Shown one piece after another: positions 19,642-34,016 of a stretch of 64,000 nucleotides of DNA. The DNA lies in the IMG/VR virus record IMGVR_UViG_3300038441_001119, positions 62,001 to 126,000 of that record; one strand, 5' to 3'. The notes under the pieces are model-generated. The model worked only from the letters and a program-made list of their open reading frames with translations. It did no database searches and was not told the DNA's origin. How positions within the stretch are numbered: position 1 is the first letter of the stretch; every line of letters starts with the position of its first letter. A program made the translations under genes and the position numbers.

Positions 19642-21561
19642 TTATCTATGTTTCCTGTTCCTTACTTCGTCCAAGTCCAGCTTACCCGCAAGGATGTCTT
19701 CCATCTCTTGTCGCTTTAATCCAAGCAAATGCCGGATTGATTCTGCAAACGCAGGATTAGGGATGCGGAAGGGGAGGGTGATCTTGCCCCATCCGTTATT
19801 ACCCACAATCGCAGGGTCGAATAACCCTCCAGTGACAGGTGCCATGTTGTTCAGATTGAGAAGTTCCCCTTTCTGAATCTCGATGGCGTTCTTGTCATCC
19901 ACGTCTTTGTCAGTGGTAGGAGCAAGGCGCAGAATACCTTTACCAACATTACGAGGAGTAATACCGGCACCTACCATTGTGTTCATAGTCTTGTCCCATG
20001 AGAAAGGGACGCCCGGTTTAGCAGGAGTCAATCCCATACGCAGTGCTCTCCAGTACTCATCGTTTTGTTGACCGCGAAGAGTAATACCTTCCCTCAGGTT
20101 ATTGTAGGCACCAGAGGAGAGCATAACGTTGGACTCCAGTCCGGAAAGTCGTTTGGAACCACCGCCTTCTCCCGAACCTTTCGCAGGTTGACGGAACAAG
20201 TCGTAGCCACCCTGACCGCGAGAAGAAGCCTTACTCGACGAGGTATGGTGAAGTTTGAGCATGTAGGCGTTACCTACAAGCACAGGGTTCTCAAGAAATT
20301 GATTGGTCTCTGGATCGAAGATTTCCTCTTCGTCAGGGATTCCCGCTTCTTCCAGTTTTTGAAGAACGGTTTCGTACCACTTCTCGCCGGGTTTGGTGAA
20401 TCCGGGAAGTTTGATGGGCTTACCTTGAGCGGCAGCCACCTTACCCAACATGATCTCGTACAACAGGGAGTTGTTGGTACGCGATGGAATGGAAAGAGGA
20501 TTAAGAAGAACATCCAAAGGCTGACCATCCTTGGTGCGTGGCATCTTCTCATCAGGGATCACAAGGGATACGGTACCCTTCTGACCAGTACGGTAGACAA
20601 CCTTGTCACCCTCTTTGGTAGGGGCGTAGGCTTTGGTAACCACTTTGACACCTTTGGGTGTGTGGAAAACATCAACAACTTCAGCAGGATACTCTTCTTC
20701 CCAGACGGACGAAGAATCACCACGTGCCTGAGACATCGTTTTCGTGAGCTTGCCGACGTTTACACCGGCAGACGAAATAACACGAGGTCTGGTGGAAAGA
20801 ATGATAGGATCGCCGGGGTCTAGGATCTGACCTTTCTGAACAACTCCACGTTCATCCAGTTTAGCGAGTTGTTTCTTGTGGAACTTCTCAGGGAACAGGG
20901 AGCGGAAATGACCAAGGCCACCCTTGATGTCCCGGTCATACTCCTGTTCGTGTGTCTCCATGTGTTCGCTGACCATATTGTCTGCGAAACCTTTACGAAG
21001 GACGATAGCGTCGTCCATGGAGTAACCTTTATATGGAACCACAGCCACACGGGTATTCATTCCCATCGCCGCTGTGCCGTTGTCGTCCGTATAGTTGGAC
21101 GTAGCCAGCAGACCTCCTGCAGTGAACTTGTCTCCTACCTTTACCTTGGAAGTGTTATGGATACCAGACTTACGGTTGAAGCTCTGGTTATTGTAGATTG
21201 CTCGTTTCTTTTTCTCTCCAGTGGCGTTCTTGTAATGAATGTAATCAGGCGTGACTTCAGTCACCTCGCCATCTTCATCCGCAAACACAGCTCCCAGATC
21301 TTTACCGAGCTTTTCATCGAAGGAGAACCCACCATCGTCGGTGGTATCAAGGTTCTGCACCCATGGAGCTTCACGGTTGCGTAACGGCATAGCTTGGTTG
21401 TCGAATCGAGCGCCGTAGAATAGACGCGGACCCTGAACACCAGACTGAATAGGAATATGATTGATGTGAGTACCAAACAGATTCTCGTGAGAGATCAATT
21501 CGTAATCAATTTCATCATCATCAAAGTCCTGAATCTTACCGTTCCTGTAACCTACCGGCAT
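19642..21561 (-). CDS. rpoB: RNA polymerase beta subunit C-terminal part, fused to a beta-prime-like N-terminal segment
   Basis: GARFDNQAMPL, PYKGYSMDDAI, GDKVVYRTGQKG, DVLLNPLSIPSR, YMLKLHH, GGSKRLSGLE; tail GGLFDPAIVG..WGKITLP resembles RpoC DGLFCxxIFG..MGHIELA. Confidence 0.9.
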   Translation of the reverse strand: MPVGYRNGKIQDFDDDEIDYELISHENLFGTHINHIPIQSGVQGPRLFYGARFDNQAMPLRNREAPWVQNLDTTDDGGFSFDEKLGKDLGAVFADEDGEVTEVTPDYIHYKNATGEKKKRAIYNNQSFNRKSGIHNTSKVKVGDKFTAGGLLATSNYTDDNGTAAMGMNTRVAVVPYKGYSMDDAIVLRKGFADNMVSEHMETHEQEYDRDIKGGLGHFRSLFPEKFHKKQLAKLDERGVVQKGQILDPGDPIILSTRPRVISSAGVNVGKLTKTMSQARGDSSSVWEEEYPAEVVDVFHTPKGVKVVTKAYAPTKEGDKVVYRTGQKGTVSLVIPDEKMPRTKDGQPLDVLLNPLSIPSRTNNSLLYEIMLGKVAAAQGKPIKLPGFTKPGEKWYETVLQKLEEAGIPDEEEIFDPETNQFLENPVLVGNAYMLKLHHTSSSKASSRGQGGYDLFRQPAKGSGEGGGSKRLSGLESNVMLSSGAYNNLREGITLRGQQNDEYWRALRMGLTPAKPGVPFSWDKTMNTMVGAGITPRNVGKGILRLAPTTDKDVDDKNAIEIQKGELLNLNNMAPVTGGLFDPAIVGNNGWGKITLPFRIPNPAFAESIRHLLGLKRQEMEDILAGKLDLDEVRNRKHR

Positions 21562-21567: not shown

Positions 21568-23427
21568 TTAATATGGAATGTAGTTATTGCTACCCGGTTG
21601 TCCCGGAGATTGCAAGAAACTATTAAGCAAGCCAGTTGCTCTGTTGATCCAAGGCACTTGGGGCGGCTCGTGTTCCATGAACTGAGCTTCAGCGGAAGGT
21701 GTGGCAGGCATCAAGTGTCTGCGAACCTGCGTGGCGTAATTGTGCATCGTGGAACCATAAGGGGTACTACGAAGATTTATGGGAGTTTGAATGCCCTTCT
21801 GACCTTGGGCGCCTACGCGGTTACCGATTCTAGCCGTTTGGATGTTCAGCTGACGAGGACCCATACCGTTGATGGCGTCTTGCTGAGGCTGCATGGAAGC
21901 AGACTTCACAGCATCAAGTGTCTTGCGAATACGATCCATCGAACTGCCAAGATTGATGGAGCCAAGGATGGGATCTTTCTTACCATCACCTGCACCGGAT
22001 TTCCCAGCCAGCTTCTGCGCTTCTTGATTGATCTTGAGGTTGATGTTCTCTTCCTGCAGTTTATCCAGCTTAGACTGCAAACTATCGGTGTCTACTTGCC
22101 CTGCGGCACCGCCGGCAGTTGCAAGAGGCGAGTTTGCCATGGAGGCAGGGGTACCCGGAGGGAGCGTAGCAGGATCAACTGCGTTGTTAGCAGGAGCACC
22201 AGCACGCATATTAGGATCATAAGCAGGCATAGTCGTAGCTGCTTTCTTCACATTGAGCTTGTCGATCTCGCCAGACAGCATGTTCATCTTTGTTTGTTCG
22301 CGTTTATGCACAGCCTTGCGTTTTTCTTCGGCTTCCAGTTGAGCTTGCTTCTGGGCTTCCATTTGCTCCTCTTGTTGGAGCTTGGCTGCCTCTTGCTGCT
22401 CTGACCATTGTTGCTTACGTTCGCCGGATTCGGTACGAAGTTGGCGACGAACGTCCTTACCGACATTACGTTGGATAGCGCCGGAGATAGGGATCTGTTC
22501 CTTCAGAGGGATACGCAGCTTGGTCTCGATGTCTCCGGGCTTACGTGTAGGAAGCGTCACAGACATGTCTCCAAGGTCTTCAGTCTTCTTACTGGACCTC
22601 CACTGGGCAATAGCAGTACCGAGGGCACCAAGGGCACCTACGCCTGCAGCAACACCCAATCCAGCTTTCATACCGGGGGACATACCTTCTTTCGGAGAAG
22701 AGACCGCTTTATTGATGTTGGGAATGTCCAACTGACTCAGCTTTTCATTACCCTTGAGTAGAAGATCCTTAGCAGGTATAGCAAGACCAGCAGCGACACC
22801 CTCAGCAGGACCAATACCTTTCCACACGCTACCAGCAGCAGCGCCGAAACCAGCATTGGTTGCCATCAGGTGACGACGATGAGGGTCAGCCATCGCGTTG
22901 GAAAAGTTTTCAATAGGTCCCTTGCCTTCTCCATAGGTAGCATAGTCAAGAGCGGGACCGCCAGCAAGGGCACCTCCTGCCAAGTGGGTAAGCCAGCTCA
23001 TGACCTTCCCCTTATCTGCAGCTTTCTTTACGACATACGGGATATGCAAGGCGTCTGCGAGGTGCTCAGACTCTTTGTTACCTTCAACAATGAGAGCCTT
23101 AACCTTATCCACAGAAGCACTCTTGATATGCAGCATCTTGCTGACAGCTTCCTTAGCCTTACCGCAACCACGATGCTCAGGGAGAAGTCCAATGGTGTAG
23201 TAACCTACTTTCACCATACCTTCCTTGCGTTCTTGCCATCCCACAAACCCCGCAGGAGACTTGTCGGAGGCCGAACGAATCATGTAGATGTCATCATGGG
23301 AATCAATGTTCAGACCATATGGCCACTTCCATGGAGCCTCGTCGTAGATAGTCTTGAGAACACCTTCGAGGATAGTACGGGAACTGGTGTCTGAAGCAGA
23401 CTTGGAAAACGATTCAACCAGATACAT
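21568..23427 (-). CDS. GNAT acetyltransferase domain fused to a virion-type low-complexity protein
   Basis: IGLLPEHRGCGKAKEAV (motif A), ALIVEGNKESEHLA (motif B); Gly/Ala-rich and coiled-coil remainder with KxA[SA] motifs. Confidence 0.65.
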   Translation of the reverse strand: MYLVESFSKSASDTSSRTILEGVLKTIYDEAPWKWPYGLNIDSHDDIYMIRSASDKSPAGFVGWQERKEGMVKVGYYTIGLLPEHRGCGKAKEAVSKMLHIKSASVDKVKALIVEGNKESEHLADALHIPYVVKKAADKGKVMSWLTHLAGGALAGGPALDYATYGEGKGPIENFSNAMADPHRRHLMATNAGFGAAAGSVWKGIGPAEGVAAGLAIPAKDLLLKGNEKLSQLDIPNINKAVSSPKEGMSPGMKAGLGVAAGVGALGALGTAIAQWRSSKKTEDLGDMSVTLPTRKPGDIETKLRIPLKEQIPISGAIQRNVGKDVRRQLRTESGERKQQWSEQQEAAKLQQEEQMEAQKQAQLEAEEKRKAVHKREQTKMNMLSGEIDKLNVKKAATTMPAYDPNMRAGAPANNAVDPATLPPGTPASMANSPLATAGGAAGQVDTDSLQSKLDKLQEENINLKINQEAQKLAGKSGAGDGKKDPILGSINLGSSMDRIRKTLDAVKSASMQPQQDAINGMGPRQLNIQTARIGNRVGAQGQKGIQTPINLRSTPYGSTMHNYATQVRRHLMPATPSAEAQFMEHEPPQVPWINRATGLLNSFLQSPGQPGSNNYIPY

Positions 23428-23468
23428 AGGACCCTTGTATCTTACTACCTTTCTGCCTTATTTGAAAT

Positions 23469-23510
23469 AAAAAAGAAAAGACTACCCCACCGGAAAGGCA
23501 GGGTAGTCTT
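23469..23510 (-). terminator. intrinsic terminator
   Basis: AAGACTACCC/GGGTAGTCTT stem + U tract. Confidence 0.7.
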
Positions 23511-23529
23511 GATGATACCATCCCAGAAA

Positions 23530-25200
23530 TTAATCGAACTGGTTGATGTGATACTCGGTGATCGTGTCGGTGGTGGTAACACGCACACGAATACCGTGCC
23601 CATCGTTCATACAGAGACCAGAAGCAGAACCAAGGGTAGGTCCTTCCATCTTGAGAGTCCTTGAAAGGGCCTCGATGGACTTGCGCACTTCGTGGTACTC
23701 GGATTTCAACATCTCAGGGAAAATGCATCCCGTAGGCTGTTGAGTATCCTGTGCTCCATCGAGAATGAACAAGGCAAACTGAGGATGATGGCTGAAGGCG
23801 GATTCATCGTTCCAGTGGGCTGGGTTCAGCGAAATCGCATTGACCTTCTTCCACGTTTGTCCGCGCAGTTTCCATTGGGAGGCTGCGGTAGGGGCGGTGT
23901 AGGTATAGTAAGAGAAGGGGTTGCGTTTTTCATGGTTATCCCACTGTAAGATAGGTTCGGCCTTCGAAAGCGATGCCGTAACAAACGACATGAAGTATCC
24001 TTGGAACGGAATGTATGCTTCGATACTGACGGCGGTGGGCAGCACAGTGCGGCGGAAACGAGTCCACGTAATGTTGGTACTACCGTGCACAGCACGAGGT
24101 GTGCGGGGGTTCGGTGGGGTTTGCTTGGTAGCAACCTTTCCAAACAATCCCGAGGTAGGGTTATTCGTGGGTTTGGTTGTGTTGGGTAGGACAGAGGGAG
24201 TCCACACCGTCCTGATTTCGTTCAGTTTTGCAAAGCGCCGACGGAAAGCCCCTGCAGCTCCGAGCTTGGTGACGATCTCTTCGGCTCGCTTGACGTTCTG
24301 AGCACCGGGAGGAGTCGATGGACGATTGAACTTGGTTGGATCAAGCCGGTCCCTCATGATGTTCTGGATGTGCTTCAGAGTGCTACCCTTTTGCACTTCC
24401 TCCAGAAGGTTCCCCGCAGCATTGCTCTTGATGTGATTGAAACCAGCAGGAGCCTGCGCCGAGCGCAACCACAGGAACCGATCACGTTTACGGGCTGTAG
24501 TTCTGTACAACTCATCGTGCAGGTTCTTGAACCACTCGATCTGACCTTGGATCTTCTCTGCGCGGAACAGTTTGTCTGCTGAAGCGATGTTGTTAGCCGT
24601 GGTAGCCTCAGCGCGAGTGAAGGTTGCCAAAGCCGATTTGAGGATACGGAACTCTTCCTTGCTCGCAGCATGCATCTGTTCGGCACTCTTGGTGAGACCT
24701 TTGTAGATGAGGTGAGAAGGAGGGGAAACCGCCATGTGCTGCCAGTCACCGGTTTTGGCGTCTCCCCACTCCTTGTCGGCGGAGTAGAAGACACCACTGA
24801 TGGTACCGCTCTCGACGTACTTCTTCATCGCCCGAACAGACTCAACGGTCTCGCCGGGTACACCATCCAGATTTCCCCACATAACGGAACGCAGGTTGAG
24901 GGTTTCCGGGTCAATGGTCACGAGGTTACCGTAGCGTTCGACGAAACGTCGGCAAGAATCGCAGCGATGCTCGGCGCGTGCTTGTTCGTTGTCCACGTGA
25001 TGCAGGAAGGTCTTGTGCAGATCGACGCCTGAAGAAGGCGTGACCGTGAACAGGATAGTGCCTTTGTCAGCGACAGCTTCGGCAAATGCTTTGCGTTGTC
25101 GCTTCAGGAAGTTGTGATATGGACGAGAGTCCTTATCAGTGCGAATTGCAGGTATAGCGGTCAGTGAAACCGCTGCAGGGGGTTGTGTCTTTTTAGCCAT
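23530..25200 (-). CDS. large hypothetical phage protein
   Basis: 556 aa; HRCDSC putative metal site. Confidence 0.8.
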   Translation of the reverse strand: MAKKTQPPAAVSLTAIPAIRTDKDSRPYHNFLKRQRKAFAEAVADKGTILFTVTPSSGVDLHKTFLHHVDNEQARAEHRCDSCRRFVERYGNLVTIDPETLNLRSVMWGNLDGVPGETVESVRAMKKYVESGTISGVFYSADKEWGDAKTGDWQHMAVSPPSHLIYKGLTKSAEQMHAASKEEFRILKSALATFTRAEATTANNIASADKLFRAEKIQGQIEWFKNLHDELYRTTARKRDRFLWLRSAQAPAGFNHIKSNAAGNLLEEVQKGSTLKHIQNIMRDRLDPTKFNRPSTPPGAQNVKRAEEIVTKLGAAGAFRRRFAKLNEIRTVWTPSVLPNTTKPTNNPTSGLFGKVATKQTPPNPRTPRAVHGSTNITWTRFRRTVLPTAVSIEAYIPFQGYFMSFVTASLSKAEPILQWDNHEKRNPFSYYTYTAPTAASQWKLRGQTWKKVNAISLNPAHWNDESAFSHHPQFALFILDGAQDTQQPTGCIFPEMLKSEYHEVRKSIEALSRTLKMEGPTLGSASGLCMNDGHGIRVRVTTTDTITEYHINQFD

Positions 25201-25397
25201 TGTGATAGGCGTGTCAGTGTGTTTTGGTGTCTTTGTTTGTGAAGTTCAGCAGCTCTAGCAATGATAGCCTCATCACTAAGGATCTGCAGCTCAAGCCAAC
25301 GAGCGAAGCCAGCGTCAACGATTTCCCGTGGACGCCCTTTGACTATTCGGACCTCTGCCTTTGCATTGGTCAGAGGAGTGTTAAGCTCCGAATTCAT
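25161..25397 (-). CDS. hypothetical protein
   Basis: 78-aa ORF. Confidence 0.5.
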   Translation of the reverse strand: MNSELNTPLTNAKAEVRIVKGRPREIVDAGFARWLELQILSDEAIIARAAELHKQRHQNTLTRLSQWLKRHNPLQRFH

Positions 25398-25977
25398 GTA
25401 CTATTTTCCTTTCCACCATGTCGAGCACATGCCCCCAGTCGAATTCATGAGTCGACAGAGCGTAGCTGTGCACGTCCTTACCGTCTAGATCTCGAAGACC
25501 TGTGGGACGCGTTTCGTCACGGAAGTAGGTCATAGCTTCTTCCAGACTGTCGGTCGCTCCACGGAAATCTTCCAGACCGCCGCCCGGGTAGTAGCTAGGT
25601 CCTGCGAATACCCAGAACCTTCCCATAGGAATTGCATTGAGAGGAGGGTTGGTCAGTACGGGGGTAGACAGTGCGTTGGGAGGAACAATTAGCTTTTCCT
25701 TTAATTCCTGCACCATCTTGTGAACAGAGGCCAAGGTGATGGGAGGCTTAAGGGAGACATACACCTGCTCACTGTCCTTGAGAATATGTCCTCCATCTAG
25801 AGGTGCTCCACCAGATGCAGCAGAAACGATCAACTCACTGGTTTCCGGTAACCCAAAGTCTTCCCGGAATTCACGGTTGGATTTCAGACGATCCACACTC
25901 CAACCCGGATCAATCCAGTAATCGTGGTTGATGCCGTTTACTGCGACTTTGATCTTGTTACGTTTGACGACGCTCAT
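25381..25977 (-). CDS. protein with N-terminal ubiquitin-like domain homologous to the di-Ubl
   Basis: KIKVAVNGINHDYWIDPG..REFREDFGLP aligns with KVIVHVNGNRSDFYVPYG..RQFKEDFALP. Confidence 0.7.
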   Translation of the reverse strand: MSVVKRNKIKVAVNGINHDYWIDPGWSVDRLKSNREFREDFGLPETSELIVSAASGGAPLDGGHILKDSEQVYVSLKPPITLASVHKMVQELKEKLIVPPNALSTPVLTNPPLNAIPMGRFWVFAGPSYYPGGGLEDFRGATDSLEEAMTYFRDETRPTGLRDLDGKDVHSYALSTHEFDWGHVLDMVERKIVHEFGA

Positions 25978-26152
25978 AGCCGTTGTTTTTTCCAGATTCC
26001 ACAATGTTGGCAACGAAGGTGTACTTCGAAACCACATGGCATGGTATGGGATGTTTCGTTGTAGATGTTGATGCTACTCTTTGTTTCCCACTGATGTTTG
26101 CACCCTTTGAAGGTGCCTATAAGTAGCCTGTATAGTAGACCTAACATAAGAG

Positions 26153-26227
26153 TGGTACCCCGTCTAGGAATCGAACCTAGATCTACCGCTTAGAAGGCGG
26201 CTGCTCGATCCATTGAGCTAACGGGGC
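26153..26227 (-). tRNA. tRNA-Arg(TCT)
   Basis: GCCCCGT/ACGGGGT acceptor, GCCGC-CTTCTAA-GCGGT, GGAT D-loop, ACCA. Confidence 0.92.
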
Positions 26228-26236
26228 TGAAGTGGG

Positions 26237-27499
26237 TTAGAACGCTTGGTACATCCGTTTACCGGAACGCTTCGAAGGGGTGAGCCTCAGGGTGGAGCCG
26301 TCGACATGCGTAATAAGAACCGAGGAGTCCGTATTGCGGATGATGCTGGCGATCTCACGGTTATACCAAGTGAGGGAACGGCTGTAGCTGCCTACGCGTG
26401 CATTGGGGTTATCCTCGTCCGTGTCATCAGTTTCAGCACGAAGGTACTGAACGTTGATGTAGTCGTCTTCATCAGGACCGAATTGCTGGAACGGAGAGGC
26501 AAACGACGCTTTGTAGAAAGCTGGAACTTCTTTGATATACTTCAGAAGTTTCTCGTCGACACTATCAAGGGCAGAAGCAATACCGTAACGCTTGGAGTTG
26601 CGGACGATATTGCGGATGGAGTAAGCGTAAGCAGCCGCGTGCTTGTCCTTCTCCTCCAGCTCGACGAAGTTATCGACCAGAGCAAGAACCGAAGTGCGCA
26701 GCTCGGCATCGAATTCAACACTCTCGTCGCTCTCGACATTGAGGAACGAAAGGAACTCCGAAGGAGGTTCATTGAACATCTTGGCTTCATTGATGATCGC
26801 CATCAGGGAGTCCAGCGACAAACCGAAGATAGTCTCGGCCGCCTTGATAACCGCATCCCGAAGATCACCCTCTGGGATCTGGTCACAGATGACAGCACGG
26901 AAAACGTCCTGACTGAGGGCGTCGTAACGCTTGTGGTAACGAACACGCCCCGGACGACTGTTGATGAAGGTGTTGACGTTCGGGTCGTTCGAGGTGAGGA
27001 CGAACAAGTGGGCAGTCGAAGAAGTACCGTCAAGAAGCGTGAGAAGATGAGCGGAATCCTCCTCGCTGTAGATCTTCTCGAACTCGTCCATGATGACGAC
27101 GCATTTGACAGGGATCTTCTGTAGGAAGTCCGAGAACTCTGAACCTTTGAAGAACGAGTTGATAAGCAGGACGGGCGACTTGGACTTGAGTCCGATCATC
27201 TTGGCGGCGACAGACTTGCCCGCACCCGATTTGCCACTGAGGAGAACGCCGATACCACGTTCAAGTTTGTGCCAAGCGGCGAGAGCGCGGTCAACGAACT
27301 TGTCGTCTTCACCGTAGATCTTTTTCGGAAGTTCGAGATCTTCTTTGATTTTCAGGTAGAAACCACTCATGTCGGCTGCGACTTCATACACGCCGACTGG
27401 GAGACCCTTGACGGGAGTGGATGCGCCATTGGTAAAACGAACTTCATTACCATTGGTGACGGAGTAAATGGGCGCTACAGTTGTTGTTTTTTCGGACAT
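26237..27499 (-). CDS. AAA+ ATPase
   Basis: Walker A GKSGAGKS, Walker B VVIMDEFEK, LLTLLDG, TSN, SRPGR arginine finger; start MSEKT. Confidence 0.9.
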   Translation of the reverse strand: MSEKTTTVAPIYSVTNGNEVRFTNGASTPVKGLPVGVYEVAADMSGFYLKIKEDLELPKKIYGEDDKFVDRALAAWHKLERGIGVLLSGKSGAGKSVAAKMIGLKSKSPVLLINSFFKGSEFSDFLQKIPVKCVVIMDEFEKIYSEEDSAHLLTLLDGTSSTAHLFVLTSNDPNVNTFINSRPGRVRYHKRYDALSQDVFRAVICDQIPEGDLRDAVIKAAETIFGLSLDSLMAIINEAKMFNEPPSEFLSFLNVESDESVEFDAELRTSVLALVDNFVELEEKDKHAAAYAYSIRNIVRNSKRYGIASALDSVDEKLLKYIKEVPAFYKASFASPFQQFGPDEDDYINVQYLRAETDDTDEDNPNARVGSYSRSLTWYNREIASIIRNTDSSVLITHVDGSTLRLTPSKRSGKRMYQAF

Positions 27500-27887
27500 A
27501 TTGGGTGCTGAGAGGAAATAAAAAAATAGAAAGGTGAAATGGAGGAGTGCCGCCATGCCGACACCCCTCCATCTCGTACGGTCTTGCAACCAACAGCAAG
27601 GAAACCCGTATCGCGTAAGCAGAACCGTTGCTCACTGGTTACGAGTTTCGAAGACAACCACATTGGAGGTTGACGCTAGGGTGACTTCTACCTTGCACTT
27701 ACCATTAGGCAGATGCTTATACCTTATACCTGAAATTAGTAACCACGGCAGGGCGTGTTAACTCCTGCTATCCTCTCCTGACAACCGATGGCCCGGTTTA
27801 AGAGGATCACCTGTTTGAGGCAGGTGGTTCGACACTTACGAACTTCGAGGTTTAACCAACAGACGACCCACCAAGGTCGACTGAAGA

Positions 27888-28676
27888 TTAGCCCGGACGA
27901 TTGGCTTGGGCGTGGCGGCGGCTGTTTGCAGCAGCACGCATGGCCTCGACGGTTTCTCGGCACATTTCTTTGTGCTCTTCCGAGTGTCGGGTCCAGTAGC
28001 CACCACCGCTGCCTGCGTGGATGATCTGCTTGGCGTAGGCTTCCCGTTCTTCAACGGAATTGCCGTGACCAGCAGCGATATGATCCACCCAAAGGACACC
28101 GGCATGCTGCAGCTTCTGCATGACCTGAATGTGCCCATCGGAACCGTTGCCAAAACTTGCGACCGCGTATGGTGTGATCGGTTTTGGTTGTTGGTCCCAG
28201 CGTCCGAATGATGCCGTCAACGAAGAGGAGGAAGCACGCTCGAACTTGCGTTCAAAGTAGGAAACGGCGAGAGCCAGATCCGTACCGCGTTTCTCCATTT
28301 CCTCAGGGGTAAGCAGCTGATAACAGACCCGCATGATCGTGGCGTTCTCAGGCCACTCACTCACGGGCAGGTCCTTTTCACGACCTTTGTACTTGCGCAT
28401 ATCTCCGCTACCCATCACTTTGATAATATGCATCTCGCGTTCGATAGGCATACTAATAAATTTCGGGTGCAGAATTCCATCTTTGACCCCACCGAAGAGT
28501 TCGATGGCACCGACGAGGCCACGGCGGACAGGGTAGAACCCGGTCAGGCGTACATTGACTTTGGATTGCTCAACCATTGGCGGGTTGAGTTCTCCGAAAA
28601 GTCCTTGATGGATGGCTTTGACGGATGCCTCGGTTTCGTGAGGTGCTGCAGGGGTTTCGTTCTTATGGTCGGACAT
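27888..28676 (-). CDS. hypothetical protein
   Basis: 262 aa, downstream of promoter motif copy 5. Confidence 0.7.
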   Translation of the reverse strand: MSDHKNETPAAPHETEASVKAIHQGLFGELNPPMVEQSKVNVRLTGFYPVRRGLVGAIELFGGVKDGILHPKFISMPIEREMHIIKVMGSGDMRKYKGREKDLPVSEWPENATIMRVCYQLLTPEEMEKRGTDLALAVSYFERKFERASSSSLTASFGRWDQQPKPITPYAVASFGNGSDGHIQVMQKLQHAGVLWVDHIAAGHGNSVEEREAYAKQIIHAGSGGGYWTRHSEEHKEMCRETVEAMRAAANSRRHAQANRPG

Positions 28677-28709
28677 GGTATGCTGTGTGTGAGAAAGAGT
28701 GTATCTCTT

Positions 28710-28745
28710 TCCAAATTTATATAGCGCAAAATCAGGGGGTATTGC
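28710..28745 (-). promoter_or_regulatory. bipartite promoter motif, copy 5
   Basis: GCAA-N14-GCGCTATATA-AATT-TGGA + GAAAGAG/CTCTTTC hairpin. Confidence 0.65.
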
Positions 28746-28806
28746 GGAAGGGGTTACGGTGCGCCAAACCGTAGCCCCTTCCTTGAATTATGCCAGAATG
28801 CCGATG

Positions 28807-28980
28807 TTATACCTTTGCGAGCTGTGCGAGACGCTTGTCACGCTCCCGTGCAATCCGACGTTTCGACTTTGCGGAGACGAATTCGTAGGTTTTGACTTTG
28901 GCGAAGATAGCCTCCACTTCTGCGGGGGTACTTGCTTCTTGGATTTGCTTGCGGGTGCTCTTTGAATGGGTGTTGGACAT
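28807..28980 (-). CDS. 57-aa basic protein (below ORF-track cutoff)
   Basis: MSNTHSKSTRK..RLAQLAKV. Confidence 0.5.
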   Translation of the reverse strand: MSNTHSKSTRKQIQEASTPAEVEAIFAKVKTYEFVSAKSKRRIARERDKRLAQLAKV

Positions 28981-29021
28981 GAGTCAGGAATGTAAGGGTC
29001 AGTTATGTATGGAAGACAAAA

Positions 29022-30686
29022 TCACAGGCTTTGAAGGTACTGCCCGATGGCAGCTGCATTCTTGCCCATGATCGGACTGTTCTTCGTGTCGTACATTACC
29101 GTTTGCTGGATGAAGCGGAGAGCTTCTTCAGCGCCTTTGCGGAGATGCTTGTTCTCAGAATCGGAATGCAGCGTAAGCATGCGGTCGATCATGAGACGAG
29201 ATTGATCTGAAGGCTTATTCAGCTGCGGCAGACTGTTGAGGGTCATTGCAATGTCCTTGTGGGTAGCGACACCCACTTCTGGAAGAACATTGATCATGTG
29301 CTGCAAACCAGAGATGGCTTCGTAACGCGACAGGGAAAAGCGCGACGACACTTCGAGGAAGAGGTGTGGAATCTTCCAGTCGGCGGAATTGATAGCTTCG
29401 TTGTTGTCAACGTCGGTATCAATAGTCGTCGCCGAATCTGTTCCAATAGGCTTCCCATTGCGAGTAATCATCGATTCCGAGATCCCCGTCACGATAGTCT
29501 TTGGGCGAGCGGGCACGCCACCCGCGCCTCCGGAAGGATAGGATGAACCATGACCACTGTAAGTCGTTCCTCCACTATAGCGACCACCTTGGCCTCCTCC
29601 GTAGTAGTTGCCACCACCATGATGGCTGGAATAGTTTGACTTTACTTCGGTGATACAGTCTTTCCACTCTTCGGGGAAGCCCTCGTCCTTGATGTGGGTT
29701 ACCCAGTGCAACGACAGCTTCTCGCGGACTTCCGCAGGAAGGGAGGCATCCCAACCGGGAACTGCGATGATGTGACCGAAGTCCTTCACCGGTACCAGCT
29801 CGGAGTTCGCAGGCAGAACGCGGTTACCTTGGTTGTCATACTCCGCAGACATCTTCACCCGGATACGGGCATGGATGTCGATAGGATACACAGCCATCTT
29901 GCCGACGGTGATATGGAAGCCCTGCTTGGTCGTCTCGTCGTCCTTGTCGGTCGCAGAGTCGAAAGCGCCCATATGAACGTGGTTGTGGGTTGTACCGTGC
30001 CAGTCACCGGAGTTGACGCCAAACTGCTCACGCAGCTTTGCGAACACTTCAAGGTTCTCCTCGGTCTCGTAATCCACCTTGACCGTCATTGCTCCACGTG
30101 TGATGCGCTGATGGAATGGGAAGTGGATGTATGCACCAGCCTCAGTGAGAAGGTGCGAGATGTGGGTCTCGGCGTTGTAGGTCTTGACCGACCAGATGTG
30201 GTACGCCACGATCTGTTTCCAGTCGTCGTACGTGATCTTCGGAGCGAGGATCTTCAGCTCCGGAGCTGCTGATTCCATGTTGAAACCAGCCGGTGGCGTT
30301 TCAGTCCACCCACGGAAGAACCTGTTTTCACGCGGAGCATAGAGCTTGCTGCCGCTGATCCGCAGACCACCTGCAGGCATTGCGACCTGTACGTACCGTG
30401 GATCCTCTTCTTCTGGGGCTGGTTCGGACGTAACAGTGATTACCGGTTGCTTGGCAACTGCAGCCGTTGAGGCTCCTGCTGTCGGCGGTACCATCGGGTT
30501 GACGCGCACTGGTTCTTCCGGGTTACTGAGGTCTGCGTTGGCAATGGCTTCGTCAACAGTTCGATTGGTGTTGTTACCCTTACCTCCTCCGCGAGGACCA
30601 CCTTGGTTCCGTTTGGACTTGTCGATGGTCTGGCCTTGCCCGCCCTTTCGGTTGGACCCTCCTTTGTTGTGATTGGTTTTGGCCAT
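29022..30686 (-). CDS. JAB/MPN+ metalloprotease-domain protein (Prok-JAB, PRTRC protein A-like)
   Basis: upstream AETH, GTTHNHVHMGAFDSATDKDDE (HxH-x7-S-x2-D), GFHITVG; start MAKTN. Confidence 0.8.
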   Translation of the reverse strand: MAKTNHNKGGSNRKGGQGQTIDKSKRNQGGPRGGGKGNNTNRTVDEAIANADLSNPEEPVRVNPMVPPTAGASTAAVAKQPVITVTSEPAPEEEDPRYVQVAMPAGGLRISGSKLYAPRENRFFRGWTETPPAGFNMESAAPELKILAPKITYDDWKQIVAYHIWSVKTYNAETHISHLLTEAGAYIHFPFHQRITRGAMTVKVDYETEENLEVFAKLREQFGVNSGDWHGTTHNHVHMGAFDSATDKDDETTKQGFHITVGKMAVYPIDIHARIRVKMSAEYDNQGNRVLPANSELVPVKDFGHIIAVPGWDASLPAEVREKLSLHWVTHIKDEGFPEEWKDCITEVKSNYSSHHGGGNYYGGGQGGRYSGGTTYSGHGSSYPSGGAGGVPARPKTIVTGISESMITRNGKPIGTDSATTIDTDVDNNEAINSADWKIPHLFLEVSSRFSLSRYEAISGLQHMINVLPEVGVATHKDIAMTLNSLPQLNKPSDQSRLMIDRMLTLHSDSENKHLRKGAEEALRFIQQTVMYDTKNSPIMGKNAAAIGQYLQSL

Positions 30687-30690
30687 GGTA

Positions 30691-32121
30691 TTAGATGAAC
30701 TGCGGAGTAAGCTGATCGGGTTTGAAGGTATTGATTGCCAGAATTTTGCTATGAGCTTTCTCAAAGGCTACGATAGGTTGAGGATCTTTCGGATGTGCGG
30801 CAGCTGCAAATTCCGCGAAATGCTTCGCAGCAGTTGCATCACGCAGGTGTATCCCTGCATGAGAGTTGTCACCAGTAGCACTGATGGTCGAGGTGAATGA
30901 CGTGGGACTCACGTTCTTGGAAGTGTGCGTAGGGAAGTACATCACACCATAGAAGAACGGGCCGTCGATCCACTGATTGAAGAACTCCTGTGCGTAACCC
31001 CAGAGGGCTTCGGCGTTCAGGATGTCTCCGGGCATCTTGTTGATCGCAGTACTGTTTTGAGCCGTGAGGATCGAAAGCTGATACGAACTGTCATACGGAG
31101 CACGTTGAACGCTGCGAATCCTGATGGCACCACGAGTAGTACCCTCTTGGGAGAGAGGGCCGCCCAGCATCTTCTCGATACCGACGCGTGTGGCTTCTTG
31201 GAAAGTCGCAGCACCACCTGCAGAGGGTACAACGAGGTACGATACCGACAGCGAGACCATCTTGGGCTTGAACGCAGGTGCGTCCCAGATGGACCGCGCC
31301 ATGTTCTTGTTGATAGTCATCTGTGAAACACCGCCTCCAACATCCCCAAACAGAGTGGAGAGACGCTGAGAACCAGCGATGGAGTGAGTGATACCAGCGA
31401 GAGGTGAGTTCTCGAAGATGAAGATCGGACGCAGCAGGGCGACGATAAACTTCCGTGAATCCGCCGGACCATAGTAGACACCGTTGGTAACAGGGATGGT
31501 TGCCTGAATGCAGTCAGCGATAGCCATCTTGGTCTCGCTGTTGCGGAGGGCCAGAATATGAGAGATATCCTGCAGAATGTGGGCTGGAGCACCCAGACGA
31601 GCGCGACCTTGGTCACCCCCACCTGTACTGGCAGAATTCTTCAGCATTCGCAGCATGTTCTTGTTAGCGTCCTCCTTTCTACGCAAGAACGAGAATTTTG
31701 GAGATTCGTAAACTTCCATGAGATCTTTGTGGGTGATCTCATCGAACTTCGTATTCATGAATGCGGCAGCAGCTGGTTCCCAGCTTTGCTGAATCATGCG
31801 GGCGACAACCTTGGAACGGAAGTCAGCGCCGTAGGCAGTAGGCTCTGGGACAAACGCAGGGATGTCTGCAAGGGGAATACCTTGGATGGCGTCGGTAGTC
31901 GAGGTAGTCCACGTGCCGCTGCTGAAGGTCAGGAGACGAACAGGCGACCCACTAGAACCGACGATTGTCGAGGTTACCGGGGGAGTCGGGATCGAGAACT
32001 GCCAAGCTGGAGCTGGAGTGGCTGGAGGTGGCGGAGTTTCGACTGCTGCAGCGGCTGGGGCCTTGTCCTTTTTGGCTGCAGTTTTGGTTACCCTCTTGGT
32101 GGCTTTCTTGGTAGTACTCAC
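30691..32121 (-). CDS. hypothetical protein inside the Ubl operon
   Basis: 476 aa, overlaps the E1 stop; no recognised domain. Confidence 0.75.
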   Translation of the reverse strand: MSTTKKATKRVTKTAAKKDKAPAAAAVETPPPPATPAPAWQFSIPTPPVTSTIVGSSGSPVRLLTFSSGTWTTSTTDAIQGIPLADIPAFVPEPTAYGADFRSKVVARMIQQSWEPAAAAFMNTKFDEITHKDLMEVYESPKFSFLRRKEDANKNMLRMLKNSASTGGGDQGRARLGAPAHILQDISHILALRNSETKMAIADCIQATIPVTNGVYYGPADSRKFIVALLRPIFIFENSPLAGITHSIAGSQRLSTLFGDVGGGVSQMTINKNMARSIWDAPAFKPKMVSLSVSYLVVPSAGGAATFQEATRVGIEKMLGGPLSQEGTTRGAIRIRSVQRAPYDSSYQLSILTAQNSTAINKMPGDILNAEALWGYAQEFFNQWIDGPFFYGVMYFPTHTSKNVSPTSFTSTISATGDNSHAGIHLRDATAAKHFAEFAAAAHPKDPQPIVAFEKAHSKILAINTFKPDQLTPQFI

Positions 32122-32837
32122 GTCAGTTTCACTTCAGTTGCTTCTTCATGCACTTCCGCTTTCGGGGCTTCCATTGGAATATCCTTGAAGCGGACACTGG
32201 TGACACCGTTGCGGGTGCCCTTGATTTCTGCTGGCACATTCTCCAGACTTGCGCAACGCTGCAGAGCATTGAACAGCCAGAGCATGAAGCTACCAGCGTT
32301 GTGGTTGGCAATCGGCAGTTGAGGTGCTGACTCGATTGCTTCGACGGTATTGCAGCTTTCGCCGGGGCCACGACCATCAGGGACGATGTTGTGGCGCACG
32401 TATGGGTCGCGATAGGTATCACCCCATTCCGGTATGAATAGGTATGCCTCGGGGTCTTCTTCTTCATTGGCACCCCAGATGATCGGGATGTCCATGCGTT
32501 CCGCGATCTTTTTCGCGTAGCAGCGTGCGTCGTGGTTGTCGACAGCCACGAACAGAATCTTGACATCGTCAGGAAGCTCGGTCATGTCGGAGATATAGGT
32601 CTCCATGCATGTGATCTTCTTGTCGGTGAACTTATCGTACATCGAGGCGTAGACTTTCGCCTTGTTTTCCGAGTCACCAAAGTGTGCGCCGATTTGACGA
32701 AGAGTATTCTTCTTCTCAAACTTGTCGCCATCGATGAGGAGCAGGTTGTGCGTCATCATGAGGGCGGGCAGGATGTGGGAGGTGACTCCTCCACAACCGA
32801 TAATGGCGATTGTATCAAAGGATCGTTCGATCTTCAT
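32118..32837 (-). CDS. E1/ThiF-family adenylating enzyme
   Basis: IIGCGGVTS, IDGDKFEKKNTLRQ, NKAKV, AVDNHDAR, ESC..PQLPIAN putative catalytic Cys. Confidence 0.88.
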   Translation of the reverse strand: MKIERSFDTIAIIGCGGVTSHILPALMMTHNLLLIDGDKFEKKNTLRQIGAHFGDSENKAKVYASMYDKFTDKKITCMETYISDMTELPDDVKILFVAVDNHDARCYAKKIAERMDIPIIWGANEEEDPEAYLFIPEWGDTYRDPYVRHNIVPDGRGPGESCNTVEAIESAPQLPIANHNAGSFMLWLFNALQRCASLENVPAEIKGTRNGVTSVRFKDIPMEAPKAEVHEEATEVKLT

Positions 32838-32846
32838 GAGTGGGTG

Positions 32847-33062
32847 TTACAGAGACTTGGACTGGTAGGTGGGGTTGTGTTTAGCAAAGATATCCCCGAG
32901 GATGCGGAGAGTTTTGCTAGGGATTTTGGGTGCTGGTTTCGGAGTCGTGAACTCCGTGATTCCTGCGGACAGGATATCAGCTGCGGCTTTGTCAGTGGGG
33001 GCTGCGCGGGCTTTAGCTGCTAGTGCGAGGAAGAAATCCCCGTCTTTTTTCTTAGCTGCCAT
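32847..33062 (-). CDS. small hypothetical protein inside the Ubl operon
   Basis: 71-aa ORF between E2-like and E1 genes. Confidence 0.55.
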   Translation of the reverse strand: MAAKKKDGDFFLALAAKARAAPTDKAAADILSAGITEFTTPKPAPKIPSKTLRILGDIFAKHNPTYQSKSL

Positions 33063-33065
33063 TTA

Positions 33066-34016
33066 TCAATCCCAGATAGGAGGGAGGGTTGCGGTGACCG
33101 TGCGAGCAATGGTTTTGGGGAACACAATGTGTAGATAGGGAGCAAGATCCCCTTCGTCAGCAATGCGTACTTCAGCGGTCATACCTGTCATCGTCTTGGA
33201 GACATCGAGGTTACCGGGAGATTCTTCGAGGTCGATGAAGACGTCGTTGAGACCGCGTGGTCCGAAAGCACCACGGGAAACCTGCGGGGACATACAGATG
33301 CGCCCGTCGTCGAAGATGTTATAAAGCGGAGGCTGATACAGGCGCTTGGTGGACTGCTCGACCATGTAGATGTACTGGGAGACATATCCCGGTTCACTGC
33401 GAGAACCAGCCTGCTCGGGATGGCTCTGACGTTGAACGAACATCACTTTGTCAAAGCCACACTCCTTGGCATTGATCGCGCACTTCCAGTTCATGGAGTT
33501 CTGGTTGAGATAGTGTCTGGAGTACTCCAGACCACCGCGATCCATATTGCTGGTGTATGGCTTGAACTTGATGGTTTTCGAAGCACCATCCCAGTAAGGA
33601 ACAAATGCACCGTTCCAAGTGCAGTAGTCCATGATCCAGATCTGCCAGATTTCACCGGCACGTTTCCACATCGACCATTTGATGTCTTGTGCGACACCAT
33701 CCACCTGAACCATCCGTTCAGTGGCCCTCATGATAGGTTCGAATGTGTCGCCACCAGTGATGTGCGAAGCGGCGATCTGTTCCACTTCCTCAATGGTGAT
33801 TTTGGCAAGGGTGAACTCACCGGGTTTGACCGATGGCATGAAGGCCATCATTGACGTTGCTGGTTTGTCCACTCCGATCACGAAACTACTCGCAGCAGGA
33901 CGCTGGATAGCTTCATAAACGATTGCATCGCCAGCAGGCGGTGCAGGTGGCGGACCTCCAGCGATATCAGCTGCGACTGCGGCAGCTTCTTCTTGTGGGG
34001 CAGCGGTTGCGCTCAT
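33066..34016 (-). CDS. prokaryotic E2-like protein (E2 family D / PRTRC protein B-like)
   Basis: LYQPPLYNIFDDGRICM matches the PxxNxxxxGxIC E2 active-site pattern. Confidence 0.7.
   Translation of the reverse strand: MSATAAPQEEAAAVAADIAGGPPPAPPAGDAIVYEAIQRPAASSFVIGVDKPATSMMAFMPSVKPGEFTLAKITIEEVEQIAASHITGGDTFEPIMRATERMVQVDGVAQDIKWSMWKRAGEIWQIWIMDYCTWNGAFVPYWDGASKTIKFKPYTSNMDRGGLEYSRHYLNQNSMNWKCAINAKECGFDKVMFVQRQSHPEQAGSRSEPGYVSQYIYMVEQSTKRLYQPPLYNIFDDGRICMSPQVSRGAFGPRGLNDVFIDLEESPGNLDVSKTMTGMTAEVRIADEGDLAPYLHIVFPKTIARTVTATLPPIWD

What the first reader, a model, noticed from the sequence alone, without database searches (positions are those of the whole stretch)
25381..27499. Third copy of the same Ubl domain, fused N-terminally to another protein, near an AAA ATPase
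Seen: the first ~75 aa of 25381..25977 align with the di-Ubl units (VNG..D(Y/F)(W/Y)(I/V)xxG..R(E/Q)F(R/K)EDF(G/A)LP) but lack the SSKA end. An AAA+ ATPase is the next protein gene upstream, with only tRNA-Arg between them. Inference: a genetically pre-conjugated Ubl fusion (adaptor, decoy or permanent substrate); the ATPase could be the reader or unfoldase, by analogy with Cdc48/Mpa.
Basis: partly seen in the sequence, partly recalled or inferred. Interest (0 to 1): 0.6.

Follow-up and report, generated by a model that had tools for sequence, protein, structure and literature searches.

The report
Tail-less ubiquitin-like domain fused to phage protein
A giant bacteriophage that carries its own ubiquitin-like tagging genes also has a third, fast-evolving copy of the tag. 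This copy is permanently fused to a small phage protein of unknown function and has lost the tail needed for tagging, and the neighbouring AAA ATPase turns out to be a common phage gene with no detectable tie to the tagging system.

Summary
Gene 25381..25977 (-) encodes 198 aa. Residues ~3-78 are a genuine paralogue of the two units of the di-Ubl gene at 34162..34611 (BLASTP E 2e-11 and 5e-11). A family profile built without any window sequence also finds it (E 3.4e-14; next best ORF 0.27), and the AF2 model is a ubiquitin/SUMO/BilA-like beta-grasp. The family's conserved C-terminal tail, [S/A]-x-K-A, is replaced by S-L-K-P-P. A helical and Pro-rich linker then leads to a C-terminal domain (PF26894 Phage_T4_Y07C, phrog_1411) that is otherwise found as small hypothetical phage proteins.

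The ATPase at 26237..27499 is a classic-clade AAA: it passes PF00004, and its fold is nearest Ycf2-FtsHi, Bcs1, YjoB, Cdc48 and FtsH. It belongs to a family (phrog_2376) found in 397 phage records and 79 further viral loci, none of which shows a Ubl, E1, E2 or JAB nearby. Three related phage contigs keep the Ubl-E2-E1-JAB operon but have no ATPase or fusion within the sequence held. In the window, both genes sit in a hypervariable slot inside a hairpin-bounded accessory unit.

Best reading: a non-conjugatable, probably non-cleavable integral Ubl-domain protein, most likely a docking module. The ATPase-as-reader idea is unsupported. The fusion is known from this one phage only.

The parts
25381..25977 (-). 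Fusion gene, 198 aa (P0001): Ubl domain, linker and Y07C-like domain. An alternative upstream ATG at 26037 would give 218 aa (P0027).
   Evidence: ORF list. Called as 198 aa on the 212-kb contig. The same protein is carried by 4 contigs read in ENA and JGI records.
25744..25971 (-). Ubl (beta-grasp) domain, residues ~3-78. Its tail reads S-L-K-P-P instead of the family's S-S-K-A.
   Evidence: BLASTP E 2e-11 and 5e-11 against the di-Ubl units. Independent profile E 3.4e-14. AF2 pLDDT 70-94. Foldseek hits to ubiquitin, SUMO, ISG15 and BilA. Family alignment of tails.
25642..25743 (-). Linker, residues ~79-112: a predicted amphipathic helix (82-95) followed by a Pro-rich stretch.
   Evidence: AF2 secondary structure, at low confidence. 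No homology to anything.
25384..25641 (-). C-terminal domain, residues ~113-198, of the Phage_T4_Y07C (PF26894) / phrog_1411 / phrog_4811 family, with invariant Y-Y-P..G..D. Function unknown.
   Evidence: Precomputed Pfam label. PHROG hits at E 4.6e-11 and 5.4e-9. tblastn matches in 215 phage records at a relaxed E of 1 or below (best 3e-5, most weak); the annotated genes fetched at these matches are hypothetical proteins of 65-133 aa. No solved relative.
25974..26147 (-). Uncalled 57-aa ORF rich in Cys and His (C-x-H ... C ... C-x-x-C). Its stop overlaps the fusion's ATG (ATGA). It is uncertain whether this is a gene.
   Evidence: ORF list and sequence. No family hit. Not called on the public contig.
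26153..26227 (-). tRNA-Arg (anticodon TCT).
   Evidence: ARAGORN. Rfam tRNA, 66.5 bits.
26237..27499 (-). Classic-clade AAA ATPase, 420 aa, of the phrog_2376 family (as phi92 gp190). Layout: N-terminal beta domain, AAA core (Walker A G-K-S-G-A-G-K-S, pore-loop-like F-F-K-G, Walker B D-E-F-E, L-L-T-L-L-D-G, R-P-G-R), helical lid, and a variable C-terminal domain.
   Evidence: Pfam AAA 29.1 bits against cut-off 21.2. phrog_2376 E 1.8e-64. Weak p97 D2 match. Motif conservation. AF2 with a 42-sequence alignment, pLDDT 80. Foldseek: Ycf2-FtsHi, Bcs1, YjoB, Cdc48/p97, FtsH, Rpt, Mpa.
25161..25397 (-). 78-aa gene overlapping the fusion's 3' end by 17 nt and the next gene by 40 nt. Function unknown.
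   Evidence: No family hit.
23530..25200 (-). 556-aa protein (PF26675 DUF8224, phrog_1735), the last gene of the same tightly packed unit. It is widespread in other phages.
   Evidence: tblastn matches in 321 phage records.
27536..27575 (-). 17-bp hairpin upstream of the ATPase start. Taken as the upstream boundary of the accessory unit.
   Evidence: Pattern scan. This is a consensus match only.
23478..23510 (-). Strong terminator-like hairpin plus T-run just after the 556-aa gene. Taken as the downstream boundary of the unit.
   Evidence: Pattern scan.
34162..34611 (-). Di-Ubl gene (149 aa), the source family of the third copy. Both units end in A-S-S-K-A.
29022..34016 (-). Rest of the Ubl operon. 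E2-like 33066..34016 (invariant P..N..C). 71-aa ORF. ThiF-type E1 32118..32837. 476-aa unknown 30691..32121. JAMM/JAB-motif protein 29022..30686 (E, H-x-H, S-x-x-D).
   Evidence: Pfam ThiF E 3.6e-14 and a weak Prok-E2_D match. Motif conservation across related phages. Conserved gene order in L002, L012 and L014.

Best explanation
The gene encodes an integral (type-2) Ubl-domain protein. Its N-terminal domain is a diverged paralogue of the phage's own conjugatable Ubl that has lost the K-A conjugation tail (now K-P-P). It is permanently joined, through a helix and a Pro-rich linker, to a small Y07C-family phage domain.

Shown: the homology, the fold, the loss of the tail, the domain make-up, and the position in a separate, tightly packed transcription-unit-like block (ATPase, tRNA-Arg, fusion, 78 aa, 556 aa) in a hypervariable slot next to the Ubl operon.

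Inferred: without a free K-A carboxyl end the domain cannot be adenylated by the E1. With Pro at the positions that flank the expected cut, the JAB peptidase is unlikely to release it. The Ubl domain would therefore act non-covalently, as a handle that docks the Y07C domain onto whatever recognises this phage's Ubl (the JAB, E2 or E1, or an unidentified reader), or that mimics an N-terminally Ubl-tagged protein.

The neighbouring AAA ATPase is an independent accessory gene, not a dedicated partner.
For: Homology and fold.

Tail. In 28 family units the C-terminus is [S/A/N]-x-K-A. It is either the end of the protein, or followed by a few residues, or followed by the next unit. The fusion keeps the Lys but has P-P after it. 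The profile match ends at position 63 of 74.

Divergence. The fusion's Ubl has the longest terminal branch in the family tree, 1.59 against a median of 0.51. It does not fall in the clade that holds most of the single-Ubl proteins (support 94/96) but with the remaining rows, most of them poly-Ubl units; its exact place is unsure because the branch is long. This fits a paralogue released from the constraints of conjugation.

Recurrence. Two other family members carry extra domains and have also lost the K-A tail: P0015, a Ubl-HicA_toxin fusion, and P0011, zinc ribbon-Ubl-250 aa.

The conserved N-terminal half, including the R-E-F-R-E-D-F-G-L-P block, is retained.

Separate unit. The genes overlap one another and the block is bounded by hairpins. 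The block is absent from the syntenic slot of three related contigs.

ATPase independence.
Against: The fusion is known from one phage only, so no comparative test of constraint or co-occurrence is possible.

No binding partner was identified. The single complex prediction (E1 with the fusion's Ubl) gave no verdict.

Retention of the N-terminal motifs may reflect fold requirements rather than a kept interface, and the long branch could equally mean decay of any Ubl-specific function.

Non-cleavage is inferred from the sequence and from the general behaviour of ubiquitin-Pro fusions, not tested for this JAMM enzyme.

The C-terminal domain could not be modelled (pLDDT below 50) and has no known function. 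The rest of the 212-kb genome was not visible.
Confidence: 0.45

Rival explanations
1. Cleavable precursor. The fusion is processed by the phage JAB peptidase (or another protease) near K77. This would release a third free Ubl and the Y07C domain, as in polyubiquitin and ubiquitin-ribosomal protein fusions, lambda TAPI (predicted) or Type I Bub BubAB.
For: The same genome encodes a JAMM-motif protein and a di-Ubl that must itself be cut between units. The invariant Lys of the tail is kept, K77. There are precedents: BubAB is cut by BubC after the Ubl's C-terminal Gly (10.1101/2024.11.21.623953), and TAPI is predicted to be cut by the JAB of gpK (PMC1779556).
Against: The residue that forms the mature C-terminus in every other member (Ala after Lys) is Pro here, followed by a second Pro. 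The last strand and tail no longer match the family profile. The gene is not in the operon but in a separate unit about 3 kb from the JAB gene and about 8 kb from the di-Ubl gene.
Confidence: 0.2
2. Exapted scaffold. The beta-grasp domain no longer interacts with the Ubl machinery at all and serves only as a folding, solubility or oligomerisation domain for the Y07C module.
For: It has the longest branch in the family tree. The tail is lost and the C-terminal half has diverged. The gene lies in a hypervariable accessory slot among genes unrelated to Ubl biology. T4-like homologues of the Y07C domain carry a different, unrelated N-terminal extension of about 55 aa.
Against: The most conserved sequence block of the family is kept at 31-34% identity to the phage's own Ubl, despite the long branch. 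The fusion occurs in a genome that has the cognate enzymes. Other tail-less fusions recur in the same small family.
Confidence: 0.25
3. The adjacent AAA ATPase is the reader or unfoldase for the Ubl (free, conjugated or fused), by analogy with Cdc48 or Mpa.
For: The ATPase is adjacent and probably co-transcribed. It is a classic-clade AAA with a pore-loop-like F-x-G, L-L-x-x-x-D-G and R-P-G-R motifs, and its fold is nearest Ycf2-FtsHi, Bcs1, YjoB, Cdc48, FtsH, Rpt and Mpa.
Against: The family is in 397 phage records and at least 79 further viral loci, with no Ubl, E1, E2 or JAB nearby. In phi92, LAh_8 and Ochrobactrum phage OC it sits among unrelated genes. The three related contigs that carry the Ubl operon show no ATPase in the sequence held. 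No recognised Ub-, Ubl- or Pup-binding domain was detected in it.
Confidence: 0.08

Closest known systems
Lambda/T1 tail assembly protein I (TAPI), a phage Ubl-linker-small C-terminal domain protein (Iyer, Burroughs and Aravind 2006, PMC1779556)
   Same: A phage protein with an N-terminal ubiquitin-like beta-grasp, a low-complexity linker and a small globular C-terminal domain, in a genome that also encodes a JAB peptidase.
   Different: TAPI has a conserved Gly at the end of the Ubl and a Gly-rich linker, and lies between the tail genes K and J. Here there is no Pfam match to any TAPI model. The tail is S-L-K-P-P, the linker is helical and Pro-rich, the C-terminal domain is Y07C-like, and the neighbours are accessory genes, not tail genes.
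Type I Bub BubAB (Ubl-E2 fusion cut by the JAB domain of BubCD), and Bil/Bub Ubls with extra domains (10.1101/2024.11.21.623953; 10.1101/2024.11.21.623966)
   Same: A prokaryotic-type Ubl genetically fused upstream of another domain, in a system with E1, E2 and JAB. Tandem Ubl proteins occur in the same systems.
   Different: BubA ends in a conserved Gly and is released by cleavage, and the extra domains of Bil and Bub Ubls are N-terminal to the beta-grasp. Here the extra domain is C-terminal, the cleavage/conjugation residue is lost, and the partner domain is not an enzyme of the pathway. PADLOC gave no hit for the Ubl, E2-like or JAB proteins.
Eukaryotic integral UBL-domain proteins (Rad23, Dsk2, parkin, BAG1) and linear ubiquitin fusions (UBA52, RPS27A; non-cleavable Ub-Pro fusions of the UFD pathway). 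From established knowledge.
   Same: A ubiquitin-fold domain at the N-terminus of a larger protein that is not conjugated, in an organism that also has a conjugatable paralogue. Pro directly after the Ub moiety is known to hinder removal.
   Different: There is no sequence relationship beyond the fold (13-23% identity in the ubiquitin, SUMO and ISG15 matches). No receptor (proteasome or UBA/UIM-like reader) is known or detected here.
Phage AAA ATPases of phrog_2376 (for example Escherichia phage phi92 gp190) within the classic AAA clade (Bcs1, YjoB, Cdc48/p97, FtsH)
   Same: The window's ATPase matches phrog_2376 at E 1.8e-64 and shares 25-29% identity and all the AAA motifs with phi92 gp190, LAh8_22 and phiOC_p118. 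Its fold is nearest classic AAA proteins.
   Different: None of those phages shows a Ubl system. The function of the family is unknown, and the C-terminal domain is variable.

Membership tests
Ubiquitin-like beta-grasp fold | beta-beta-alpha-beta-beta grasp topology that superposes on ubiquitin or other Ubls | tested here: met
   AF2 pLDDT 70-94 for residues 1-78. Foldseek hits to ubiquitin, SUMO, ISG15 and BilA with target-normalised TM 0.6-0.7 and rmsd 2.3-3 A. Viral ubiquitin-family hits.
The phage K-A-tailed Ubl family (di-Ubl 34162..34611 and 20-odd relatives) | Significant sequence/profile similarity to the family | tested here: met
   BLASTP E 2e-11 and 5e-11. Leave-out profile E 3.4e-14. 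Whole-library profile search lists it among 26 hits.
The phage K-A-tailed Ubl family, as a conjugatable modifier | C-terminal [S/A/N]-x-K-A at the end of the protein, before a short extension, or before the next unit | tested here: not met
   The tail is S-L-K-P-P, followed by 120 more residues. The profile alignment stops at position 63 of 74.
The phage K-A-tailed Ubl family, as a conjugatable modifier | Encoded directly next to the E2-like, E1 and JAB genes | tested here: not met
   The gene lies about 3 kb beyond the JAB gene, in a separate hairpin-bounded unit. It is absent from the operon region of L002, L012 and L014.
Integral (type-2) Ubl-domain protein | The Ubl domain is embedded in a larger polypeptide and lacks the conjugation terminus | tested here: met
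   Domain map.
Integral (type-2) Ubl-domain protein | Not released by the cognate peptidase, and acts by non-covalent binding | not testable with these tools
   Only inferred from Pro-Pro at the junction. The complex prediction of E1 with the Ubl gave no verdict.
Lambda TAPI | Match to the TAPI family, a terminal Gly on the Ubl, and a position between tail genes K and J | tested here: not met
   No Pfam or PHROG hit to a tail-assembly family. No terminal Gly. The neighbours are the ATPase, a tRNA and DUF8224.
Classic-clade AAA ATPase (PF00004) | Walker A and B, second region of homology with Arg fingers, Pfam score above the gathering cut-off, and an AAA fold | tested here: met
   29.1 bits against cut-off 21.2. 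Motifs conserved in 42 homologues. Model pLDDT 80 and top Foldseek hits all classic AAA.
Ubl/Pup-dependent unfoldase (Cdc48-Ufd1-Npl4, Mpa, proteasomal Rpt) | Co-occurrence with the modifier system | tested here: not met
   397 phage records and 79 viral loci have the ATPase without a Ubl, E1, E2 or JAB. Three contigs with the operon show no ATPase.
Ubl/Pup-dependent unfoldase (Cdc48-Ufd1-Npl4, Mpa, proteasomal Rpt) | A modifier-binding domain or adaptor, and demonstrated binding | not tested
   No such domain was recognised by Pfam or NCBIfam. The ATPase-Ubl pair was not submitted for complex prediction.
Bil / Bub / PRTRC-type bacterial Ubl systems (for the operon that supplies the Ubl) | HMM matches to the system's Ubl, E2, JAB and E1 families | tested here: inconclusive
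   The E1 matches only generic ThiF, plus weak matches to CBASS E1-E2 and PRTRC_ThiF models. The E2-like protein has sub-threshold Prok-E2_D and PRTRC_B hits over 20 residues around the Cys. The Ubl and JAB proteins have no hits. PADLOC 2.0.0 dates from 2023.

The most novel reading that the evidence does not exclude
The phage runs a minimal two-tier ubiquitin-like system like that of eukaryotes. One tier is a conjugatable poly-Ubl with its E1, E2 and JAB. The other is a dedicated, non-conjugatable UBL-domain adaptor that delivers or tethers a small effector (the Y07C domain) to a Ubl-recognising machine, possibly the co-transcribed classic AAA ATPase. That would be a viral, prokaryotic analogue of Rad23/Dsk2-type shuttling to an unfoldase.
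Probability: 0.08. Interest if true: 0.8.

Novelty: new variant of a known kind. Interest (0 to 1): 0.45.

Why it matters
Ubl-domain proteins that are not themselves conjugated are a hallmark of eukaryotic ubiquitin biology. I found no description of one encoded alongside a cognate E1/E2/JAB system in a bacteriophage, in either the paper library or the databases searched here.

If the Ubl domain really docks onto the phage's Ubl machinery or onto readers of the tag, the fusion offers two things. It is a ready-made bait for finding what recognises this unusual K-A-tailed Ubl. It is also a first functional lead for the widespread but uncharacterised Y07C family of small phage proteins.

The negative result matters as well. 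The AAA ATPase should not be annotated as part of the Ubl system.

Tried and rejected
Homologue searches. Word-indexed searches with the fusion, the di-Ubl and the C-terminal domain returned only the query itself or nothing.

Scans for related loci. Scans of viral contigs with the Ubl alignment, the E1, the ATPase and the JAB alignment found only the same 212-kb phage. So did the scan of JGI metagenomes with the E1 alignment. The scan of 185,579 species genomes with the Ubl alignment found nothing, though its sensitivity is limited to two peptide patterns. Broader Ubl alignments had no stretch conserved enough to scan with.

Megablast of 13 kb against the phage collection: no match.

Family libraries. 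Pfam, PADLOC and NCBIfam gave nothing for the fusion. The PDB sequence searches with the Ubl profile and the Y07C profile gave nothing useful.

Modelling. The single-sequence AF2 model of the linker and C-terminal domain was unusable, with pLDDT below 50.

Complex prediction. E1 with the fusion's Ubl (residues 1-82): no verdict, which is not evidence either way. The ATPase-Ubl pair was not submitted because only adjacency supported it.

Contexts of other family members (P0005, P0007, P0008, P0011, P0014, P0015) were on contigs too short to be informative.

Considered and rejected:
- Assembly or frameshift artefact. The same ORF is present on four contigs read in ENA and JGI records.
- TAPI membership. 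There is no family hit and the context is wrong.
- A fourth Ubl copy or a stand-alone Y07C gene in the window or in the relatives. None was found.
- A conserved ATPase + DUF8224 + Y07C module in other phages. In the 79 viral loci with an ATPase homologue, neither other gene lies within about 6 kb. The phage-record lists for the three families differ in their main taxa but were not formally intersected.
Full report
**What the window is.** Almost all genes are on the minus strand. The window is part of a ~212-kb phage contig present in IMG/VR, JGI and ENA (IMGVR_UViG_3300038441_001119; Ga0247822_10000002). It carries an RNA polymerase beta-like gene (19642..21561), a DEAD-box helicase, a DNA ligase, ThyX, five tRNAs and a tmRNA. 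Megablast finds no close relative in the phage collection.

**Checking the observation.** The product of 25381..25977 (-) is 198 aa.
- Residues 6-67 align with both units of the di-Ubl encoded at 34162..34611 (-): 34% and 31% identity, E 2e-11 and 5e-11.
- A profile search of 1.84 billion representative proteins found only 26 hits. About 22 of them are credible members of one small family. These are di- and tri-Ubl proteins, single Ubls and a few fusions.
- To avoid circularity I rebuilt the profile without the fusion and without the window's own di-Ubl. It still hits this ORF at E 3.4e-14, while the next non-Ubl ORF of the window scores E 0.27. So there are exactly three copies in these 64 kb.
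- A single-sequence AF2 model is confident for residues 1-78 (pLDDT 70-94). It superposes on ubiquitin, SUMO, ISG15 and the bacterial BilA Ubl, and on viral ubiquitin-family proteins.

**The tail.** Across 28 aligned units the family ends in [S/A/N]-x-K-A. After that motif the protein either stops, carries a few extra residues, or continues into the next unit. This is the pattern expected if K-A is the mature C-terminus, playing the role of ubiquitin's G-G. That is an inference.

The fusion keeps the Lys (K77) but reads S-L-K-P-P and then continues for 120 residues. The family profile no longer aligns beyond position 63 of 74. In a family tree the fusion's Ubl has by far the longest terminal branch, 1.59 against a median of 0.51. 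It lies outside the clade that holds most single-Ubl proteins, among rows that are mostly poly-Ubl units, although its exact place is unsure. It looks like an old paralogue of the operon's Ubl that was released from the constraints of conjugation.

Two other family members with extra domains have also lost K-A. P0015 is a Ubl-HicA_toxin fusion. P0011 is a zinc ribbon-Ubl-250 aa protein. Tail-less fusions therefore recur in this family.

**The other half.** Residues ~113-198 belong to PF26894 (Phage_T4_Y07C), phrog_1411 and phrog_4811. A relaxed tblastn search (E up to 1) finds this domain in 215 phage records, with a best E of 3e-5 and most matches weak. In the records fetched it is a stand-alone protein of 65-88 aa or the C-terminal half of 125-133-aa proteins of T4-like phages. 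All but one of these genes are annotated 'hypothetical protein', and in the T4-like phages they lie next to tRNA genes. The invariant core is Y-Y-P..G..D. No solved structure or paper was found, and I could not model the domain. Its function is unknown. No second copy exists in the window or in the related contigs.

**The ATPase.** The 420-aa protein passes Pfam AAA (29.1 bits against a cut-off of 21.2) and matches phrog_2376 at E 1.8e-64. It has Walker A and B, a pore-loop-like F-x-G, L-L-T-L-L-D-G and R-P-G-R, all conserved in 41 homologues. An alignment-based AF2 model (pLDDT 80) is closest to Ycf2-FtsHi, Bcs1, YjoB, Cdc48/p97, FtsH, Rpt and Mpa.

Its distribution, however, is independent of the Ubl system.
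- tblastn finds the family in 397 phage records (phi92-like phages, Herelleviridae and others). The di-Ubl finds none and the E1 finds one weak hit.
- In 79 further IMG/VR loci (840 kb) no Ubl, E1, E2-like, JAB, Y07C or DUF8224 gene lies within about 6 kb of the ATPase.
- The annotated neighbourhoods in phi92, LAh_8 and Ochrobactrum phage OC are unrelated.

**Related phages.** Three contigs share the window's gene order: L002 (30.7 kb), L012 (14.6 kb) and L014 (22.9 kb). The order is GP88-like, 148 aa, poly-Ubl, E2-like, small ORF, E1, ~400-aa protein, JAB, then the 619-aa protein and, where the contig reaches that far (L002 and L014), RNA polymerase beta. Identities run up to 66%.
- Between the JAB gene and the 619-aa gene each contig has only about 1 kb, holding one 261-331-aa gene (plus a 71-aa gene in L002). 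These slot proteins are not similar to one another or to the window's 262-aa protein.
- The window has 5.6 kb in this slot. It holds the 262-aa gene and then a block between a 17-bp hairpin (27536..27575) and a strong terminator-like hairpin (23478..23510). The block contains the ATPase, tRNA-Arg, possibly a 57-aa Cys/His ORF, the fusion, a 78-aa gene and a 556-aa DUF8224 gene, the last three with overlapping ends.
- No ATPase, Y07C or DUF8224 gene is detectable in the sequence held for the three relatives. Only 14.6-18.2 kb of each was visible.

The ATPase and the fusion are therefore cargo of a hypervariable slot that happens to abut the Ubl operon. They are not conserved members of it.

**The operon that supplies the Ubl.** This was not the finding itself, but it is context. 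The E2-like protein has an invariant P..N..C segment reminiscent of the UBC H-P-N...C motif in all four phages. The 554-aa protein has a complete JAMM motif (Glu, H-x-H, S-x-x-D) that is conserved in L002. The E1 is a short, single-domain ThiF-type adenylase. Known-system models (PADLOC, NCBIfam PRTRC, Pfam Prok-E2_D) give only sub-threshold or generic hits. I found no paper describing a phage-encoded system of this kind.

**How it most likely works.**
- Shown: the homology, the fold, the loss of the tail, the domain architecture, the separate unit, and the independence of the ATPase.
- Inferred, step 1: without a free K-A carboxylate the domain cannot be adenylated.
- Inferred, step 2: with Pro on both sides of the expected scissile position, cleavage by the JAMM enzyme is unlikely. 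This is by analogy with ubiquitin-Pro fusions (established knowledge), so the Ubl stays attached.
- Inferred, step 3: the kept N-terminal half, including the family's most conserved block, suggests a kept interaction surface.

The domain would then act as a docking handle, or as a mimic of an N-terminally tagged protein, for whatever recognises this Ubl. I put this reading at 0.45. The only interaction test available, E1 with the fusion's Ubl, gave no verdict and carries no weight.

**Comparison with known systems.**
- The nearest architecture in phages is lambda/T1 TAPI: Ubl, linker and small C-terminal domain, with a JAB in gpK (PMC1779556). The defining features of that family (terminal Gly, tail-gene context, family match) are not met.
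- Type I Bub BubAB is a Ubl-X fusion cut by a JAB. Bil and Bub Ubls carry their extra domains N-terminal to the beta-grasp, not C-terminal.
- Functionally the closest analogue is the eukaryotic integral UBL-domain protein.

I therefore rate this a new variant of a known kind. It is real and unusual, but it is a singleton without a demonstrated partner.

**Verdict.** Interest 0.45.

Noticed in passing
window 29022..34611 (-); L002, L012, L014: A complete Ubl-E2-E1-JAB gene set (di-Ubl, UBC-like protein with invariant P..N..C, short ThiF-type E1, JAMM-motif protein, plus an unknown 476-aa gene). It is conserved with the same gene order in four jumbo-phage-like contigs. The Ubl family ends in K-A instead of G-G. 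I found no paper describing such a phage-encoded system.
   Followed up: partly
window 9396..9856 (-): Rfam finds a full-length tmRNA (103 bits, E 3.8e-39) that ARAGORN did not report. This is a phage-encoded tmRNA next to two tRNA genes.
   Followed up: no
window 3697..3775, 9124..9199, 9214..9291 (-): For three tRNA genes (confirmed by Rfam) ARAGORN reports odd four-base anticodons (ccta, gaaa, tttg). They may have unusual anticodon loops or be suppressor-type tRNAs.
   Followed up: no
P0015 (L009:37-471) and P0011 (L008:385-1545): Other members of the same small Ubl family are fused to a HicA_toxin domain (Ubl-HicA, 144 aa) or sit between an N-terminal zinc ribbon and a 250-aa C-terminal region. 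Both have lost the K-A tail. The contigs are too short to show context.
   Followed up: partly
window 25974..26147 (-): An uncalled 57-aa ORF with a C-x-H ... C ... C-x-x-C pattern starts 6 nt after the tRNA-Arg and ends in an ATGA overlap with the fusion's start codon. It may be a small zinc-binding protein translationally coupled to the fusion.
   Followed up: partly
window 23427..29022; L002 10553..11735; L012 12886..13671; L014 13150..14145: The slot between the JAB gene and the 619-aa gene is hypervariable. Each of the four phages carries different, mutually dissimilar genes there.
   Followed up: yes
window 21568..23427 (-): The 619-aa protein directly upstream of the RNA polymerase beta-like gene is conserved in the relatives. 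There its N-terminus carries weak or faint GNAT acetyltransferase Pfam hits.
   Followed up: no
window 26237..27499 (-) and 79 IMG/VR loci (L019-L097): A widespread family of phage classic-clade AAA ATPases (phrog_2376, as phi92 gp190), with conserved pore-loop-like and Arg-finger motifs, has no assigned function despite occurring in hundreds of large phages.
   Followed up: partly
window 41710..41746 (-): Rfam abiF RNA match, just above the gathering score (38.8 bits against 37).
   Followed up: no
window 28807..28980 (-): A small 57-aa ORF after the JAB gene appears, by eye only, to resemble the 71-aa gene that follows the JAB gene in L002. It may be a conserved small operon member.
   Followed up: no
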